From Podarcis filfolensis (taxonomy: Eukaryota), in the NCBI GenBank assembly GCA_964270895.1, contig OZ185453.1: a DNA stretch of 64,000 bases; one strand, given 5' to 3'. A program made the translations under genes and the position numbers. The notes under the pieces were generated by a model. That model did no database searches. It had not been told where the DNA came from and saw only the letters and a list, made by a program, of their open reading frames with translations. Below are positions 10,035 through 64,000 of this stretch, piece by piece (position 1 is the first letter of the stretch; the number at the start of each line of letters is the position of its first letter).

Positions 10035-10308
10035 AGCGACAGCACAGATTCAACAGTGTGTGATACTAAGAGCTTGCCTTGTTGAGAATCCCAGCTCTCT
10101 ATTTTGTTTCAAAAATCTTTTCCTCAGGGCTGCAATGATGGCTTGAAAGTGTGTGCAGCAATACCCACTGAAGTCTTAAAAGGTGGCTAAATAAGTTTTC
10201 TAGCAACTGAGACAAATATTTGGGGTCCTTCATATCTCCCTTCTCGTCTCCATGGTCACCAAAACACAGAATTATGAAAAATAAATTAAATTAATGCAAA
10301 TACACATA

Positions 10309-10549
10309 CAGTCGTACCTTGGAAGTCGAACAGAATCCATTCCAGAAGTCCATTCAACTTCCAAAACTTTCGGAAACCAAAGAGTAGCTTCTGATTGGCT
10401 GCAGGAAGCTCCTGAAGCCAATTGGAAGCCCCGTTGGACATTCAGCTTCCAAAAATAGTTCGAAAACCGGAAAAATCACTTCCAGGTTTGCAGCGTCTGG
10501 GAGCCAAAATGTTTGAGAACTAAGCTGTTTGAAAACCAAGGTACGACTG
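10309..10549. mobile_element. Tc1/mariner-pogo (Tigger-like) MITE
   Basis: TIRs CAGTCGTACCTTGG / CCAAGGTACGACTG, TA TSD on both sides, 241 bp. Confidence 0.9.
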
Positions 10550-10740
10550 TACAGGTCACAGAGTCTGGATTGCCTGGACGTAGAAATTTACATATATTTT
10601 TCTCTTTAGACATGTCCTGCTCCACAACTCAAATGAAGAAAGAAAATGGAATGTGGGCCAAGGAGAAGAAAAGTATCCTTTCCTCTTCTCGTCTCCGAGC
10701 ACCCCTCCCCACAAAAAAACCCAATCAATAGAATACTTAC

Positions 10741-26765: not shown

Positions 26766-27006
26766 CAGTCGTACCTTGGCTCCTGAATGCCTTGGTAATT
26801 GGACATTTTGGCTCCCGAACACCACAAACCCGGAAGTGAGTGTTCCGGTTTGCTAACATTCTTTGGAACCCGAACGTCCAACATGGCTTCCGATTGGCTG
26901 CAGGAAGTTCCTGCAGCCAATCAGAAGCCATGCTATGGTTTCTGAACGTTTTGGAAGTTGAATGGACTTCCGGAACGGTTTCCGTTCAACTTCCAAGGTA
27001 CGACGG
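26766..27006. mobile_element. Tigger-like MITE, same family as 10309-10549, opposite orientation
   Basis: TA|cagtcgtaccttgg ... ccaaggtacgacgg|TA, 241 bp; the reverse complement aligns by eye along the whole 10309 copy. Confidence 0.9.
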
Positions 27007-31980: not shown

Positions 31981-32072
31981 CAGCATTCCTCAACCAGGTG
32001 CCCTCCAGATGTTAGCAACAGCTCCCATCAGTACCAGCAAGAATTTGGAAGGCATCAGGTTGGGGAAGGCTG
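31981..32072. mobile_element. Short decayed hAT MITE
   Basis: Imperfect TIRs cagcattcctcaacc / ggttggggaaggctg; no clear TSD. Confidence 0.5.
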
Positions 32073-32135
32073 GCCTAGTAGAAGGCAATCTGTAGATGTG
32101 TTCACCAAAGTGATTTGAATTTGAGTATTCTGTGG

Positions 32136-32136
<1 letters not shown>

Positions 32137-32170
<34 letters not shown>
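32137..32170. repeat. (TG)17 microsatellite
   Basis: Read directly. Confidence 0.95.
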
Positions 32171-32173
<3 letters not shown>

Positions 32174-32622
32174 TATCCTTGAAAAAAGGAATATTTCAGT
32201 GTCAAATATGAAATATGAATATATTAATGTTAATGTTATATAACACATACAGACACTGCTTAACATATAGATGCCTAATCAGTTACAATGGAAAACCCTA
32301 AATGACAAAGTATCATGAACTAGAGTGATCACATCCACTCTCTCTATCAAATAATTACATTCCGTATGCTCTATATCCTGGACTTTGTGAGAAGTGAGAA
32401 ACATCTAGTGATTAAAGCAATGAAACAGCAAGGGAGGGCTATGAGATAAACGCTATGTGTAAAGAGCAATCCAAATTCTATAGGAAAACATGATAACCAT
32501 CACCTCAAATGCTTGAATGTCCAGTCCTGACCCTCCAACCCCATCCCAGGTAAAAGTTGAACAAAGACATGGGGCAACTGGTGGGGGGAGGGTATGTCTC
32601 CTTTCCCTTTCCTTGGACTCAC

Positions 32623-32775
32623 CTCAAAGAGTAAAGTTAACAGCAGGATGCGTGTGGCCAGGTTGGAGGCCTGTGGCAGGGTGGCCATCTGGCTGATCCA
32701 CTCTGAGACAGTCTTGGTGTCGCTAGTGGTGAGGGGCAGAGCTGCTTTTATAAGGACATCAGCGGCTTCCCACAC
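32623..32775 (-). CDS. HUWE1: HUWE1 exon 25 ([10 protein letters not shown]...LTLLFE)
   Basis: ggcag| / |gtgagt, 153 nt. Confidence 0.96.
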
Positions 32776-33225
32776 CTGCCAATGAAAGGGCATGTTATGA
32801 ATGGAGTGGATTATCAGTAAGATAGCCTTTCTTGGACACTAGTCTTAATCCATTACAGAACATCCAGAACACAATGGCATTAAGGTATTTGCTCAGAAGG
32901 CTATGATGCTAGGCCCTGCAGGCACCTGCTGGCAACAGGAAGTTAACTGTTCTAAAATTGAGACCTAAGCATATCAAACACTGACCTCTATGAATTCTAC
33001 CTGGAGACATGCTCTTGTTAATTTGTTATACCTTGGGTTCCACATTATCTCCCCGCTGCCCTCCAGCTACTTAAACAGAGTTTTCCCTACTGAGATAAAT
33101 GCTTATGTTTCAAGAGAGCATGTATATTCAGGTATCCCCCCCTACTACCATGTGTTCAATTCACGTGTGACCATGCATATGCATGGCTCCAGAAACCTGG
33201 AAGTGGGGGGGAGATACCTGATGAC

Positions 33226-33520
33226 CCTCAGCAAAGCCCTGCTGAGCCTCTAGCTCGTGAGGAGACCCTCCCTGAAGGGGACATCTTTCGGACTCCGGGG
33301 ATGGTCTCTTCATGAGCCAGAGGTGCAACAGGGCTTTGCTGAGGCTCCCAGCTAACAGCTGATGTGTGGCAAAGTGGTTGCTGCTGCACCTTCCCGAGCA
33401 TCAGGCAGAAAGCCCCGCTGTGTCTCTGGCTCACACGAGCCAAAGTGGCAGCGGGTCTTCTTGACCAGCTCAGCTGGTGCACAGGGAAGAAACTTCTTCC
33501 ACACACATCAGCGGGGCTTT
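33226..33520. repeat. Four-arm fold-back element (two homologous long hairpins)
   Basis: Inverted arms 33226-33244/33326-33344 and 33409-33420/33509-33520; arms share the AAAGCCC(C/T)G(C/T)TG core. Confidence 0.8.
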
Positions 33521-34075
33521 GTTGAGCTGACAGGCAACTCCCCATTTTATGCGATTTCAGTGACACGTGCAGAAATTCGGAATGTAACCGCTACGTAAAT
33601 GAGGAGTCACCTGTACCATTACACTTGAGTTACCCATGTGTGTACACATCTACCTCGAAGCCTCTGTGGCCAACTGAGCTTCCTGTTTTATACACAAAGA
33701 GGAAAACATCCAGTTTTCAATTGGGTTCTTGATTTTTCCTAATGTATTGTACATTAAGCAGTCCTTGGGAGTCCTTTCATCCAGCACACATCGTGCGGCC
33801 CAATGCAGGTATTATCTTCCAGGATCTCAAATCCAAGCTCTAACTGAACCCAATGCTTGCAGCCTGTCTTCCAGATTGTCCCTGGAAACCTGGTGAACTT
33901 AAGTACCTAAAGAAGCCTTTTCCTGTTCTAGAGCATCTTGGATAATCACCTAGGCTAACAAAGCACTGGGATAATGCAGTCTTCTTCATGGCAAGAATAG
34001 CATAAAATGGACTGAGTATTGTTCAGGACGCCTCCCAATGTAAAGAGATTGTGTGGTCTTGGTAGATACACTCAC

Positions 34076-34345
34076 CTGATTCACCACTTGCTTGAGGATC
34101 ATGTCTCTGTAGTCAGCACCATTGCGCTTGATGGCAGTCATGATGAGGTCGCAGACCCGGTACACCGTGTCTGGCAGCTCATCCAACAGGTGGAAGCAGC
34201 CAGGAAGCATGGTGTCTGTAAAGCTGTGCAGCTCTTCTTGCTCCAGAGGTTCAGCATCCTGGAACTTCTCTAGACACTTTGCCTCCTCCTCCTCCTGCTT
34301 CTCCCTGGCCTTACGTTCTTCCTCCTCTTTTCGGCAGGCAGCTTC
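34076..34345 (-). CDS. HUWE1: HUWE1 exon 24 ([12 protein letters not shown]...KQVVNQ)
   Basis: tctag| / |gtgagt, 270 nt. Confidence 0.96.
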
Positions 34346-34639
34346 CTAGAGAGCAGAAACGGCTGGTTATAAATATTGCTTTCACAGCACCACAGACTCA
34401 CCTGCCTACCTCCCTCAAGGATAAGGCACGGTTCCTCTGCCATTTGCAGCTGTCCTATTATTATCAAAGAAAATTGAGTCTGTGATATTTACATTGTCAC
34501 GACCACAGGTTCTCACCACATTTCTGCAATCTTTGAATTCCAGGATGCATATGCCAGCCCACTCCCGACTTCTTTCCAAAAACCTCACCAGTATTCCTTC
34601 AACCCAGCACTTTATGGAATCCCCTTATGATGCCTTTAC

Positions 34640-34735
34640 CTCTGGTGATTCAGCTCTTTGGTCCATGGGGATGTCTTGTCCCAGTGACATAGCAATGGCC
34701 CTCATCATTTGATCTTCTTCAGACATACTCAGATC
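34640..34735 (-). CDS. HUWE1: HUWE1 exon 23, UIM-like ([18 protein letters not shown]...ESPE)
   Basis: gacag| / |gtaaag, 96 nt. Confidence 0.96.
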
Positions 34736-35016
34736 CTGTCATACAACACAGAAATAACCCTGTGAGGTTACGGAACTCAATGCAAGGGAAACTAAACAGT
34801 TCTCCAAGCAGTCTACAGGGCCTAAATTACAGAATTCAAGTAGGAAGAGACCTACCCTTTGGGTACACTGCTTATCCTCCTGGCTAAGGCCACCACAACT
34901 ACATTAAATTAGCTTGCAGTACACATTTTCCTTCAGAAGTATCAAGCTGGAGAGAGTGGCAGCCCAGGAATATGCCCTTCCCCTGCTACTTAGTCTTAGC
35001 TGCTAAGTGGCCTTAC

Positions 35017-49887: not shown

Positions 49888-50956
49888 GGCTAGGTAAATA
49901 AGACAGTTTCACAGTCCATGGTTTGAAGTTGGCTGGTTTACACAGAACAAATTTTTAAAAATCACAATCTCTGATTTATATGTAATAAGTCAGGTTTTGT
50001 GGAAGTGAAACTAAACCCTGTAGGTGTCCTCTGAGGTGAGAGGAAGAACACAAGCCCAAGGCTCACAGCAGCTCCTTCCTGTCATGTTTTAGTCTTACAT
50101 GAGAACATGGACAATCTGAAAGCCCAGTGGTGGGAATAAGCAGGTTTATCAAGGTTTGAAAAGATCCAGCCAAGTTGTGGTTCTTGGTAAGTTATAATTT
50201 GGGAGTTTCTCCAAAGCAATGAATACTCTGTGTTGATGCATTTTTAAGAAAGCACTTGCAGCTAAGTTTGGTCATCTGACCAATCAAAAAAAGATTTGGT
50301 CAACTGACCAAATAGTGGTTAACTTTGAAAGAATTAACTTTAATTAGAACAAAAACAGAAAGATAAACATGTTTGATATTTGTACTAATTACAAAAACAA
50401 AATAATCTGTTAATGAAATCATAAAGTTACTACCATATTTAAAACAAAAAGAACTGTAATGAATTATAACTTTCAATCACTTGAAATGTGAATTCACTGA
50501 ACTGTTCTCTAGCTTTTATCCCGAACACCAGGGTCAGTCTATGACTACATAATGAAATAAAATCCCAAATAAAGTATAGCAACAGCAACCAACTAAAAAG
50601 TTTTAAATGCAGTTGTGCTAATTAGGCAGCTAGTAGGTTCAACCATTGTGGCTTGATGAGGTATGTGATTGTGGTCAAATGATAACAGATAGCAAATTTA
50701 TAATGTCTGATCTGTCAATTGACTGGCATGCCAACCCTACCCATAAGCTCACAAAAGCCAATTTCTCCTAGTCACAAGCCAACAGAATAATGAGCACATT
50801 CCCCAGAGAAAAATTAAGCCTGCCAGGAGAGCAGGAAGATTACACATGCACAGCATAGAATGGAACTGAGAGGAGTAAATTAAATATTCCCACCCACTCT
50901 CACTTGCAAGTGAATTTCTCTGAAAGCCAGTGGTGCTTACTTCCGAGTAAAATGTA

Positions 50957-51784
50957 TGTAAGGCAGGAAATAGGTAAGTGAAGAATCAGCTTGCAGAAAC
51001 AAGAAAGAAAAGCTAACAGTACCACTTTGACTGAAACCCACCTCTGGGTTCTGCTGTGGTCCAAGTGATCTTTATAACAGCTTCACCCACCTCTTTCCTT
51101 AGAATTGTGCTTTGTATAATACAGGGGTAGGCAACCTAAGGCCCGGGGGCCAGATGCCGCCCAATCGCCTTCTCAAGGCGTGCGGATGGTCCGGGAATCA
51201 GCGTGTTTTTACATGAGTAGAATGTGTCCTTTTATTTAAAATGCATCTCTGGGTTATTTGTGGGGCATAGGAATTTGTTCATTTTTTTCTTCAAAATATA
51301 GTCCGGCACACCACATGGTCTGAAGGACGGTGGACCGGCCCATGGCTAAAAAAGGTTGATGACCCCTGGTGTAATATATCACTTCAATCACATCTCAGGG
51401 CTATAAATCCAGCAGAGCCCACTCTACCATTCACTGGCTGTGTTATGTTCACTGCCTAGAAACTCTGTTCATTGTGTAGCACTGTAAACCTACTAAATAA
51501 ACAAATGCAAACCATGAATATAAGGCATTATTTGTGAATCTGTGGCCTGCTTCAATACCAAACAGGTATTAAATGTCAGCAACCTTGTATTGAAGGGTAA
51601 ATATCACAATAATGCTAAACAGTAAAATGACCATGGTCTTATCCTGTCTTGATTCAAAACCATAAGGCAGGCATGAACAGCAAGACACTGAATGAGGAGG
51701 TGGGTTTCAGTCAAAGTGGTACTGTTAGCTTTTCTTTCTTGTTTCTGCAAGCTGATTCTTCACTTACCTATTTCCTGCCTTACA
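50957..51784. repeat. Perfect 88-bp inverted repeat (50957-51044 / 51697-51784), 652-bp spacer
   Basis: Base-by-base reverse-complement identity; the second copy is flanked by the direct repeat agacactgaa (51683-51692 / 51784-51793). Confidence 0.93.
51122..51368. mobile_element. hAT (Charlie/OposCharlie1-like) MITE
   Basis: TIRs CAGGGGTAGGCAACC / GGTTGATGACCCCTG; TSD gtataata / gtgtaata (7/8); 247 bp. Confidence 0.88.
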
Positions 51785-52523
51785 GACACTGAAACAAATG
51801 CACCATTTCTCAAACAGTCTCTACCAAAAATGCTCAAAGGAATCAAACTTTACTCTTATGAAGGGCTTTTTTCTTTTTTGCAACAGTACACTTCACTAAA
51901 TGAACTCAACAGTTGCCTCAAATTCTGCTTTTCCCTCAATGTAGTGATCATAGCACACAGGAAAATGCATGCTTTGCTAACACACGAAGAGCTATGCAAA
52001 TGCATTTTCTGCTGTGTACAATGCACTTGCCAGTCAACATGGGTAACAGCTGCCCAAGTACATTTTCTGCTATATGCAGCAACCTTGACAGTTATGTGAA
52101 GCACGTTGACCAGGATCCAGAGAGTTGCTTAGGCTTACTCAGAGAGCCTCTGCTAATCCAGTGGGATGTATCTTTTGTATAGCTTACCCATCCCAACACA
52201 CCCCGTGCTGGCACCAGCTGCTCTGAAACGCTCCGTTTCAAAACTAATTGCCAAGTGGCATGTTGGATTGCCACTGAAGAAAAACAAGACCCCATTAGAT
52301 TCATGGAATTAACTTCATGGGTTCTCTGAACCATCACCATGCTCTTCCTAAACATGAAGGACAGCCCAGTTGTTTTGCCAAGCCCCCCCCCCCCCCGGCC
52401 CTCAAATACAGGTTGTTTTCAAGCAGCTTTAAAAACTGATCAGAAAGCAAGTGCAGGCTAGACTTTGCAGCAAGCCACCATTCACAGGATTGCTGTATGT
52501 TATTTTTAGCCTCAGCTACTCAC

Positions 52524-63346: not shown

Positions 63347-63698
63347 AGTAGTTAAGTAGGAAAGAAGCTTACAGCCAACTTAAACTTATCTCATTGACAA
63401 TATTGTGGTGGGAGTGGGAATAGATCTTATCTAGATTCGGGGGGTGGGGAGAGATCACAGATTAAGGTTGTATCTTAAGATACTGCTGCTTTTATATATA
63501 AAGGTGGCACTATGACACGTAGTACCTTTTTGCCAGGTATAACCAGTTATGCCTTCTCTGTAGGAGCAGCAGAGATCTGCGCTATGGTAATTTCCATATT
63601 ATATTACTGTAATATATTCAGTTTGGGGCTACCCTTGAAAGCTGTTCATAAACTTCAGTTAGTGCAGCAGCTAAGCTAGTGGCTGGGACTGACTATTG

Positions 63699-63834
63699 CA
63701 GGCATAGGCAAACTCGGCCCTCCAGATGTTTTGGGACTACAACTCCCATCATCCCTAGCTAGCAGGACCAGTGATCAGGGATGATGGGAGTTGTAGTCCC
63801 AAAACATCTGGAGGGCCGAGTTTGCCTATGCCTG
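63699..63834. mobile_element. Palindromic hAT MITE
   Basis: 58-bp perfect inverted arms, 20-nt loop, perfect 8-bp TSD gactattg. Confidence 0.95.
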
Positions 63835-64000
63835 GACTATTGGAATCATCTCCTTGGTACCTAAAGATCTCAGCTGGTTACCGGTTAGTCTCTGGGAAAT
63901 AAGTCAAGACTTGATAGCACTAACTCATCCGGGTCTAAATACTGATATATAGAGAGGACAGGCTGACATGTCCAGGGCCAAGTCTTTTTTCAGCAATGGT

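What the first reader, a model, noticed from the sequence alone, without database searches (positions are those of the whole stretch)
33226..33520. Unexplained ~300-nt four-arm fold-back element in the exon 24-25 intron
Seen: hairpin A (33226-33344, 119 nt) has a 19-bp basal stem with one G-U on the sense strand, then a 14-bp stem, a 6-bp stem and an imperfect 8-bp stem. Most defects are G-U or A-C pairs. Hairpin B (33409-33520) is closed by a perfect 12-bp stem and encloses three small hairpins (ggaagaa/ttcttcc, ccagc/gctgg, tggctc/gagcca). The arms of A and B are homologous (gagccagagacacagcggggcttt versus gagctagaggctcagcagggcttt). A further motif (gctgatgtgtg, 33358-33368, versus cacacatcagc, 33502-33512) offers a mutually exclusive pairing. 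I found no TIR/TSD and no convincing C/D or H/ACA boxes. Inference: a structured intronic RNA (ADAR substrate, novel miRNA-like precursor or splicing switch) or an unclassified fold-back repeat.
Basis: partly seen in the sequence, partly recalled or inferred. Interest (0 to 1): 0.7.

Follow-up and report, generated by a model that had tools for sequence, protein, structure and literature searches.

The report
Decayed fold-back repeat in HUWE1 intron
The striking multi-hairpin sequence is real, but it is an old, decaying copy of a palindromic repeat found about 45-50 times in these lizard genomes, sitting in a HUWE1 intron with no sign of a selected RNA function, so it is ordinary.

Summary
It folds equally well on both strands (z -11.3 and -10.0), and hairpin A's defects show no strand bias: 4 G-U on +, 3 G-U on -, 3 transversion-type. 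This points to DNA-level inverted repeats, not a strand-specific RNA.

The element is larger than reported: about 33129-33616, four successive palindromes.

Contigs of three related lizards were laid on the intron. Each genome has exactly one contig on the unique flanks but about 100 partial contigs (80-95% alike, unrelated flanks, single-copy depth) on 33134-33650. That is about 45-50 arm copies per genome, so this is a dispersed repeat family.

At 4 of hairpin A's 10 defects the family's majority base restores a Watson-Crick pair, so this copy is decaying from a more perfect palindrome.

All three species carry the element at the orthologous site. It diverges at the same rate as the flanks (5/488 vs 9/783), and two small stems are not conserved.

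There is no Rfam, tRNA or Pfam match. No TSD was found and the family is unnamed. RNA editing and small RNAs could not be tested.

Earlier notes of this scan describe nested-palindrome MITE-like repeats elsewhere in this genome; whether they are the same family is not shown.

The parts
33129..33616 (.). Whole repeat-derived block: four successive palindromes, about 490 bp
   Evidence: Extra contigs pile up only on 33134-33650 in three genomes. Five to seven contigs per genome run on into unrelated sequence after 33616. 33127-33616 folds with z -13.6 (+) and -12.7 (-).
33127..33222 (.). Palindrome P0: arms TCAGGTATCCCCCCC / GGGGGAGATACCTGA around a catgcatatgcatg centre
   Evidence: I7: 15-nt arms, 93%. 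nhmmer self-inverted match E 9.8e-6. Fold z -7.3 / -5.7. Its right arm is contiguous with hairpin A in other genomic copies (records 9, 10, 25).
33223..33347 (.). Hairpin A: 55-nt arms, 82% complementary, 15-nt loop. This is the most repeated part of the family.
   Evidence: Summed contig depth is about 46x (33220-33262) and about 27-33x (33306-33348) the single-copy depth.
33348..33408 (.). Spacer between A and B. It holds the motif GCTAACAGCTGATGTGTGG, which also follows hairpin A in other family copies.
   Evidence: Loose-end consensus TTCAGCCTCCTGGCTAACAGCTGATGCATG behind 33347, and its mirror image before 33226 in other copies (table 7). Read directly from the sequence.
33409..33520 (.). 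Hairpin B: perfect 12-bp closing stem around three small hairpins. Taken as a unit, 33396-33543 is an inverted, diverged copy of 33208-33347.
   Evidence: I9, I5. (inverted alignment, 93/159 identical, strong at both ends). (z -5.0 / -5.7).
33358..33512 (.). Alternative outer pairing 33358-33382 with 33488-33512
   Evidence: I4: 25 nt, 76%. (self-inverted match 33358-33512, E 1e-8). Used in the minimum-energy fold.
33208..33543 (.). Outer inverted repeat: 33208-33245 pairs with 33508-33543 (30 of 38 alignment columns identical)
33530..33616 (.). Palindrome P3: CAGGCAACTCCCCATTT ... AAATGAGGAGTCACCTG. Other copies match exactly this span in both orientations. This is the right edge of the family.
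   Evidence: both arms match one degenerate pattern with 0 mismatches. (records 14, 15, 23, 31; loose ends at 33616). (z -1.9 / -4.8).
32776..34075 (-). Host intron of HUWE1, 1300 nt, GT...AG on the minus strand. The element lies 429 nt from the 3' splice site and about 530 nt from the 5' splice site.
   Evidence: Splice sites read. The downstream exon, 32623-32775 (-), matches HUWE1 residues 1488-1538 with E 9e-25.

Best explanation
Window 33129-33616 is an old, decaying copy of a dispersed, non-coding, palindromic (fold-back, MITE-like) repeat family of lacertid lizards. It sits in a HUWE1 intron.

Shown:
- The hairpins exist because the family's own sequence is a long palindrome. This copy contains two inverted, partly rearranged units of it, plus two flanking palindromes.
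- The G-U and A-C 'defects' are transition mutations, some of them CpG decay, accumulating independently in the two arms.
- The copy was already at this site in the common ancestor of the three species sampled, and it has since drifted at the intron's neutral rate.

Inferred:
- The family spread by DNA transposition, or by another copy mechanism that keeps palindromes.
- The internal inverted duplications arose by hairpin or template-switch rearrangement.
- In HUWE1 pre-mRNA the block will fold into imperfect double-stranded RNA, as any intronic inverted repeat does. That has no selected role.
For: 1. Multi-copy. In three genomes the flanks 32790-33133 and 33650-34060 carry exactly one contig. 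33134-33650 carries about 107-116 laid contigs, mostly under 90% alike, and 71-75% of them run on into unrelated sequence. Each listed contig is at single-copy depth (8-21). Summed depth is about 45-51x single copy on 33220-33262 and 27-33x on 33306-33348.
2. Strand symmetry. MFE is -178.7 (+) against -181.0 (-). Hairpin A has 4 G-U on +, 3 G-U on -, and 3 transversion-type defects.
3. Decay from a better palindrome. The majority base of the paralogues restores a Watson-Crick pair at 4 of hairpin A's 10 defects: 33225 C>G, 33328 A>G, 33309 T>C, 33302 T>G (table 3). Loose-end consensus sequences show that in other copies the stem continues into the loop and beyond both ends (table 7).
4. No constraint. 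The orthologous contig of species B shows 5 differences in 488 nt of the element against 9 in 783 nt of flank (Fisher p = 1). 33437 G>C in species B and C breaks a closing pair with no compensating change reported at its partner. 33477 is A in all the other genomes.
5. No match to any Rfam family at its gathering score, no tRNA, and no Pfam domain in its ORFs.
Against: - No target-site duplication was found, and the terminal inverted repeat is weak (CAGGTATCCCC against CAGGTGACTCC). The transposon class is therefore not established.
- The family could not be matched to a named Dfam or Repbase entry, because no such library was on hand.
- No second copy lies in this 64-kb window.
- About 50 arm copies at 80% or more is a low number for a MITE.
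- RNA-level effects (editing, small RNAs) were not testable: no RNA run holds the locus.
Confidence: 0.85

Rival explanations
1. The repeat copy has been exapted as a structured intronic RNA. Candidates are a hairpin precursor of a miRNA or endo-siRNA, an ADAR editing substrate with regulatory effect, or a splicing switch that uses the mutually exclusive pairings.
For: - Very stable hairpins sit on the sense strand (hairpin A -85.9 kcal/mol on the minus strand).
- Alternative pairings exist (I4 and I9).
- The element is kept at the orthologous site in three species.
- MITE palindromes are known to give rise to miRNA genes (hsa-mir-548 from Made1, PMC1784062; title and abstract seen).
Against: - Folding and wobble counts are the same on both strands.
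- The substitution rate equals that of the flanks.
- Stem pairs are lost or gained between close species without compensation (33437, 33477).
- This copy is more decayed than the family consensus.
- There is no Rfam match; the best, mir-1756, scores 24.9 bits against a gathering score of 100.
- A 55-bp stem is longer than the stem of a canonical animal pre-miRNA (background knowledge).
Confidence: 0.06
2. The block arose on the spot by fold-back or template-switch duplication of unique intron sequence, like the inverted templated insertion noted in another HUWE1 intron of this window. It is not a mobile-element copy.
For:
- The internal units A and B are inverted copies of each other.
- One paralogue lacks 33405-33501 (joint 33404>33502), so parts of the interior may be local gains.
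Against: The arms themselves occur about 45-50 times per genome, with unrelated flanks, in three species. Local duplication can therefore explain at most the internal rearrangements, not the origin.
Confidence: 0.05
3. It is a fragment of a tandem satellite with palindromic monomers, not an interspersed element.
For: - It is a succession of related palindromes in alternating orientation.
- Earlier notes of this scan describe palindromic minisatellites inside MITEs in this genome.
Against: - The paralogous contigs listed are each at single-copy depth (8-21 against 10-20 for the unique flank).
- 71-75% of what was laid runs on into unrelated sequence. That pattern fits dispersed copies, not a collapsed high-copy array.
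- The local inverted and direct repeats are only about 58-83% alike.
Confidence: 0.03

Closest known systems
MITEs and fold-back (long-TIR) non-autonomous DNA transposons
   Same: Small (about 0.5 kb), non-coding, palindromic, multi-copy, dispersed with unrelated flanks, sitting in an intron, with a sharp family boundary at 33616.
   Different: No target-site duplication could be shown and the terminal repeat is weak. The CAGG-type motif also recurs internally, where family similarity runs straight through it (records 9, 10, 25). Only about 50 arm copies reach 80% identity or more. No autonomous partner is known.
Pogo/Tc2/Tigger-like MITEs carrying nested-palindrome minisatellites, noted elsewhere in this genome by this scan (unchecked AI notes)
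   Same: Same genome, and the same general architecture of hairpins within hairpins. The ends start CAGG and the right end is followed by TA.
   Different: No sequence similarity to the Tc1/mariner-type MITE present in this window (10307-10551) or to the hAT fold-back MITE (63694-63839). The left end is flanked by TT, not TA. Same-family membership is untested, because the sequences of those notes were not available.
Inverted-repeat transposon pairs in introns that act as ADAR substrates (for example inverted Alu pairs), and MITE-derived miRNA genes (hsa-mir-548 from Made1, PMC1784062)
   Same: This is how the element would behave as RNA: an intronic, repeat-derived, imperfect duplex tens of base pairs long.
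   Different: No editing or small-RNA evidence exists here, there is no conservation signal, and no miRNA family matches.

Membership tests
MITE / fold-back DNA transposon | Many dispersed copies with unrelated flanks | tested here: met
   About 107-116 contigs per genome were laid on the element against exactly 1 on the flanks. 71-75% run on into unlike sequence. About 45-51 arm copies at 80% identity or more.
MITE / fold-back DNA transposon | Terminal inverted repeats at the element's ends | tested here: inconclusive
   33129 CAGGTATCCCCCC against the reverse complement of 33601-33613, CAGGTGACTCCTC: 9 of 13 match. The outer arms otherwise align only weakly. The left boundary is poorly defined.
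MITE / fold-back DNA transposon | Target-site duplication | tested here: inconclusive
   Flanks are TT...TA for a 2-bp model, and TGTATATT against TACCATTA for an 8-bp model. No clear duplication.
MITE / fold-back DNA transposon | Small and non-coding | tested here: met
   About 490 bp. The ORFs of 112 and 78 aa have no Pfam match above cut-off.
Animal miRNA precursor | Match to a known family, or a hairpin conserved with strand-specific pairing | tested here: not met
   The best Rfam hit is mir-1756 at 24.9 bits against a gathering score of 100. Wobble counts are symmetric between strands. Stem pairs are not conserved between species.
Animal miRNA precursor | Discrete small RNAs from the stem | not testable with these tools
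   No RNA run holds the locus.
ADAR-edited intronic dsRNA | Clustered A-to-G differences between RNA and DNA of the same individual | not testable with these tools
   Only contigs of DNA runs cover the locus.
Tandem satellite | High-copy head-to-tail arrays | tested here: not met
   Listed paralogous contigs are at single-copy depth and have unique flanks. Local units are inverted and only about 58-83% alike.
tRNA-derived SINE | tRNA-like head with A and B boxes | tested here: not met
   ARAGORN finds no tRNA. A box-A-like TGGCAAAGTGG at 33366-33376 stands alone, with no box B.

The most novel reading that the evidence does not exclude
Hairpin A, or the whole four-hairpin block, is a lineage-specific, repeat-derived source of small RNAs, or an edited dsRNA that tunes HUWE1 pre-mRNA processing in lacertid lizards. 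More broadly, it may belong to an undescribed class of palindromic repeats that grow by successive inverted duplication, seen repeatedly in this genome.
Probability: 0.05. Interest if true: 0.5.

Novelty: new member of a known kind. Interest (0 to 1): 0.12.

Why it matters
It matters mainly as a caution. A z-score of -11 and G-U or A-C 'defects' look like an RNA gene, but a palindromic repeat produces the same picture on both strands.

CpG decay on the two arms of a palindrome can also mimic a compensatory change. Positions 33240 and 33330 form a T-A pair here, where other copies of the arm in this element have C-G (33416, 33513) and many paralogues read G at 33330.

The block adds an imperfect duplex of about 55 bp to HUWE1 pre-mRNA in these lizards. 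That makes it a possible incidental ADAR or Dicer substrate, but nothing suggests it is used.

Tried and rejected
- Rfam scan at E up to 5 on 32000-35000: only sub-threshold hits. mir-1756 scored 24.9 bits and MIR6426 hit both strands. A SCARNA7 'hit' at 32038-32182 rests on a GT microsatellite.
- tRNA scan: nothing.
- Second copy in the window: none by blastn (word 9 and word 7) or nhmmer.
- TIR pattern search in the window: only the two arms of P3.
- Comparison with the window's other MITEs (10307-10551 and 63694-63839): unrelated.
- The idea that P0 and P3 are separate mini-MITEs with CAGG termini flanking a foreign insert: rejected for P0. Paralogues run straight through the supposed terminus into hairpin A (records 9, 10, 25, and the loose end GGTCAGGTCTCTCCCC...).
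- A recalled likeness of the P3 arm to Tigger-type terminal repeats: left as an untested lead.
- Literature: no paper on such a lacertid repeat, and no paper holds four family motifs.
- The scan's own index by sequence: blank.
- Read laying was given the intron only, to keep the conserved exons out.

Full report
**Observation**

- Hairpin A has 55-nt arms (33223-33277 / 33293-33347), 82% complementary, 15 nt apart.
- Its basal 19 positions (33226-33244 / 33326-33344) have a single C.A on the + strand. That is a G.U on the minus strand.
- Hairpin B is closed by a perfect 12-bp stem (33409-33420 / 33509-33520) and holds the three small hairpins named.
- The arms of A and B are homologous: 83% over 24 nt.
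- 33358-33382 can pair with 33488-33512.

Folding energy is far beyond dinucleotide shuffles:
- 33215-33535: -178.7 kcal/mol, z -11.3 on the + strand; -181.0 kcal/mol, z -10.0 on the minus strand.
- Hairpin A alone: z -10.4 / -10.5. Hairpin B: z -5.0 / -5.7.

**Context**

The host gene runs on the minus strand.
- The exon 32623-32775 (-) matches HUWE1 residues 1488-1538 of the solved structures, E 9e-25.
- The splice sites read put the intron at 32776-34075 (1300 nt).
- The element lies in the middle of the intron, more than 400 nt from either splice site.

**Anatomy beyond the reported coordinates**

Self-comparison shows four successive palindromes:

| Unit | Coordinates |
|---|---|
| P0 | 33127-33222 |
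| Hairpin A | 33223-33347 |
| Span closed by the alternative pairing, which contains hairpin B | 33358-33512 |
| P3 | 33530-33616 |

- An outer inverted repeat joins 33208-33245 to 33508-33543.
- Taken as a unit, 33208-33347 aligns in inverted orientation with 33396-33543. The match is strong at both ends and diverged in the middle.
- The block is therefore a palindrome made of palindromes, centred near 33375.
- 33127-33616 folds with z -13.6 (+) and -12.7 (-).

**What it is**

The decisive result is. Logan contigs of a second individual of the source species label (X3) and of two related species (X4, X6) were laid on the intron alone, at 80% likeness or more.
- On 32790-33133 and 33650-34060, each genome has exactly one contig.
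- On 33134-33650, each genome has about 107-116 laid contigs. For X3 the split is 1 at 99% or more, 5 at 95-99%, 17 at 90-95% and 86 below 90%.
- 71-75% of the laid contigs run on into sequence unlike the window.
- The paralogous contigs listed are each at single-copy depth (8-21).
- Summed depth is 45-51 times the single-copy depth on 33220-33262 and 27-33 times on 33306-33348. The figure is nearly the same in all three species.
- Five to seven contigs per genome leave the window's sequence exactly after 33616 with unrelated continuations. That marks the right edge of the family.

This is a dispersed, moderately repeated, old family. It is not a collapsed satellite and not a local oddity.

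A run guessed to be RNA from a fourth organism (X16) also holds pieces of the family in other sequence contexts.

**The hairpins are a family property, and this copy is decaying**

- Loose-end consensus sequences show that in other copies the stem of hairpin A continues into what is the loop here (...CAGAGCCCAAAGAGGACATCC...GGGCTCT...).
- They also show that the stem continues outward on both sides, in two variants (table 7). One variant mirrors the window's left side (GGTCAGGTCTCTCCCC...). The other mirrors its right side (...GGCTAACAGCTGATG).
- At four of the ten non-Watson-Crick positions of hairpin A, most paralogues have the base that restores a Watson-Crick pair: 33225 C>G, 33328 A>G, 33309 T>C, 33302 T>G (table 3).
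- The other copies of this arm inside the element read CCCCGCTG / CAGCGGGG (33409-33420 and 33509-33520), where hairpin A reads CCCTGCTG / CAACAGGG, and many paralogues read G at 33330. So the T-A pair 33240-33330 is most simply two independent CpG decays. That looks like a compensatory change but is not one.
- Of the ten defects, 4 are G-U on +, 3 are G-U on the minus (sense) strand, and 3 are transversion-type. There is no strand preference.

**Conservation**

One contig in each of X3, X4 and X6 spans the whole 1271 nt with 12-17 differences. The element was therefore already at this site in their common ancestor (records 8, 16, 24).
- For species B (run X4), 5 differences fall in the 488 nt of the element and 9 in the 783 nt of flank (Fisher p = 1).
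- 33437 G>C in species B and C breaks the closing pair of the tggctc/gagcca hairpin, and no change is reported at its partner.
- 33477 is A in all three other genomes, so the fifth pair of ccagc/gctgg exists only in the window's lineage.
- 33417 G>A in species C gives A.C on + and G.U on the minus strand.

Nothing here points to selection on structure. The divergence is small, so the test is weak.

**Other searches**

- No Rfam family comes near its gathering score.
- No tRNA.
- The ORFs across the block have no Pfam domain.
- There is no second copy in the window.
- Two papers' searches and a motif search found nothing on this family.

**Class of element**

The class is not settled.
- The right end reads ...GGAGTCACCTG followed by TA. 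The left end reads TT followed by CAGGTATCCCC. That is a weak terminal inverted repeat without a clear target-site duplication.
- The same CAGG motif recurs internally at 33207-33220 and 33531-33543.
- At the first of these sites, paralogues run straight through it (records 9, 10, 25). It is therefore not a terminus there.
- Earlier, unchecked notes of this scan describe pogo/Tc2/Tigger-like MITEs filled with nested-palindrome units elsewhere in this genome. The architecture is alike.
- This block, however, shares no sequence with the Tc1/mariner-type MITE at 10307-10551 or with the hAT fold-back MITE at 63694-63839 of this window. Same-family membership could not be tested.
- The planned empty-site test failed.

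**Mechanism**

- Shown: this is a multi-copy palindromic repeat copy, present in the ancestor of three species, decaying neutrally.
- Inferred: it arrived by transposition of a non-autonomous DNA element, or by a comparable copy mechanism. Its interior was reshaped by hairpin-mediated deletion and inverted duplication. One paralogue lacks 33405-33501 and another lacks 33360-33488 (joints).
- Inferred: as RNA it will form imperfect duplexes in HUWE1 pre-mRNA and could be edited or diced incidentally. No RNA run holds the locus, so this is untested.

**Verdict**

- The 'fold-back repeat' alternative is supported and the 'functional structured RNA' alternative is not.
- This is an ordinary finding of low interest.

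Noticed in passing
window 63694-63839: A young fold-back MITE. Its 63-nt arms are 97% complementary and 20 nt apart.
   Followed up: partly
window 10305-10553 and 26882-26932: A Tc1/mariner-type MITE flanked by TA (TACAGTCGTACCTTGG...CCAAGGTACGACTGTA), with an internal palindrome of CCAAT-box-like motifs (GATTGGCTGCAGGAAGC...GCCAATTGG). A near-perfect 25+25-nt palindrome of the same motif stands alone at 26882-26932 and is probably the core of another copy.
   Followed up: partly
window 50953-51044 and 51697-51788: A 92-nt inverted pair, 99% complementary, 652 nt apart. This is the templated inverted insertion already reported by this scan for another HUWE1 intron.
   Followed up: no
window 32790-34060: A run with the same species label as the source (X3) differs from the window at 12 of 1271 intron positions. 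It shares 8 of them with the two other species (32918, 33062, 33477, 33625, 33657, 33805, 33961, 33984). At this locus the window's individual is therefore the outlier, which suggests deep lineage structure or a labelling issue.
   Followed up: no
window 32038-32182: A GT microsatellite produces a spurious weak SCARNA7 match (23.4 bits against a gathering score of 65).
   Followed up: yes
window 33205-33211: The G-run at the junction of P0 and hairpin A varies in length between individuals and species (+G or +GGG after 33204).
   Followed up: no
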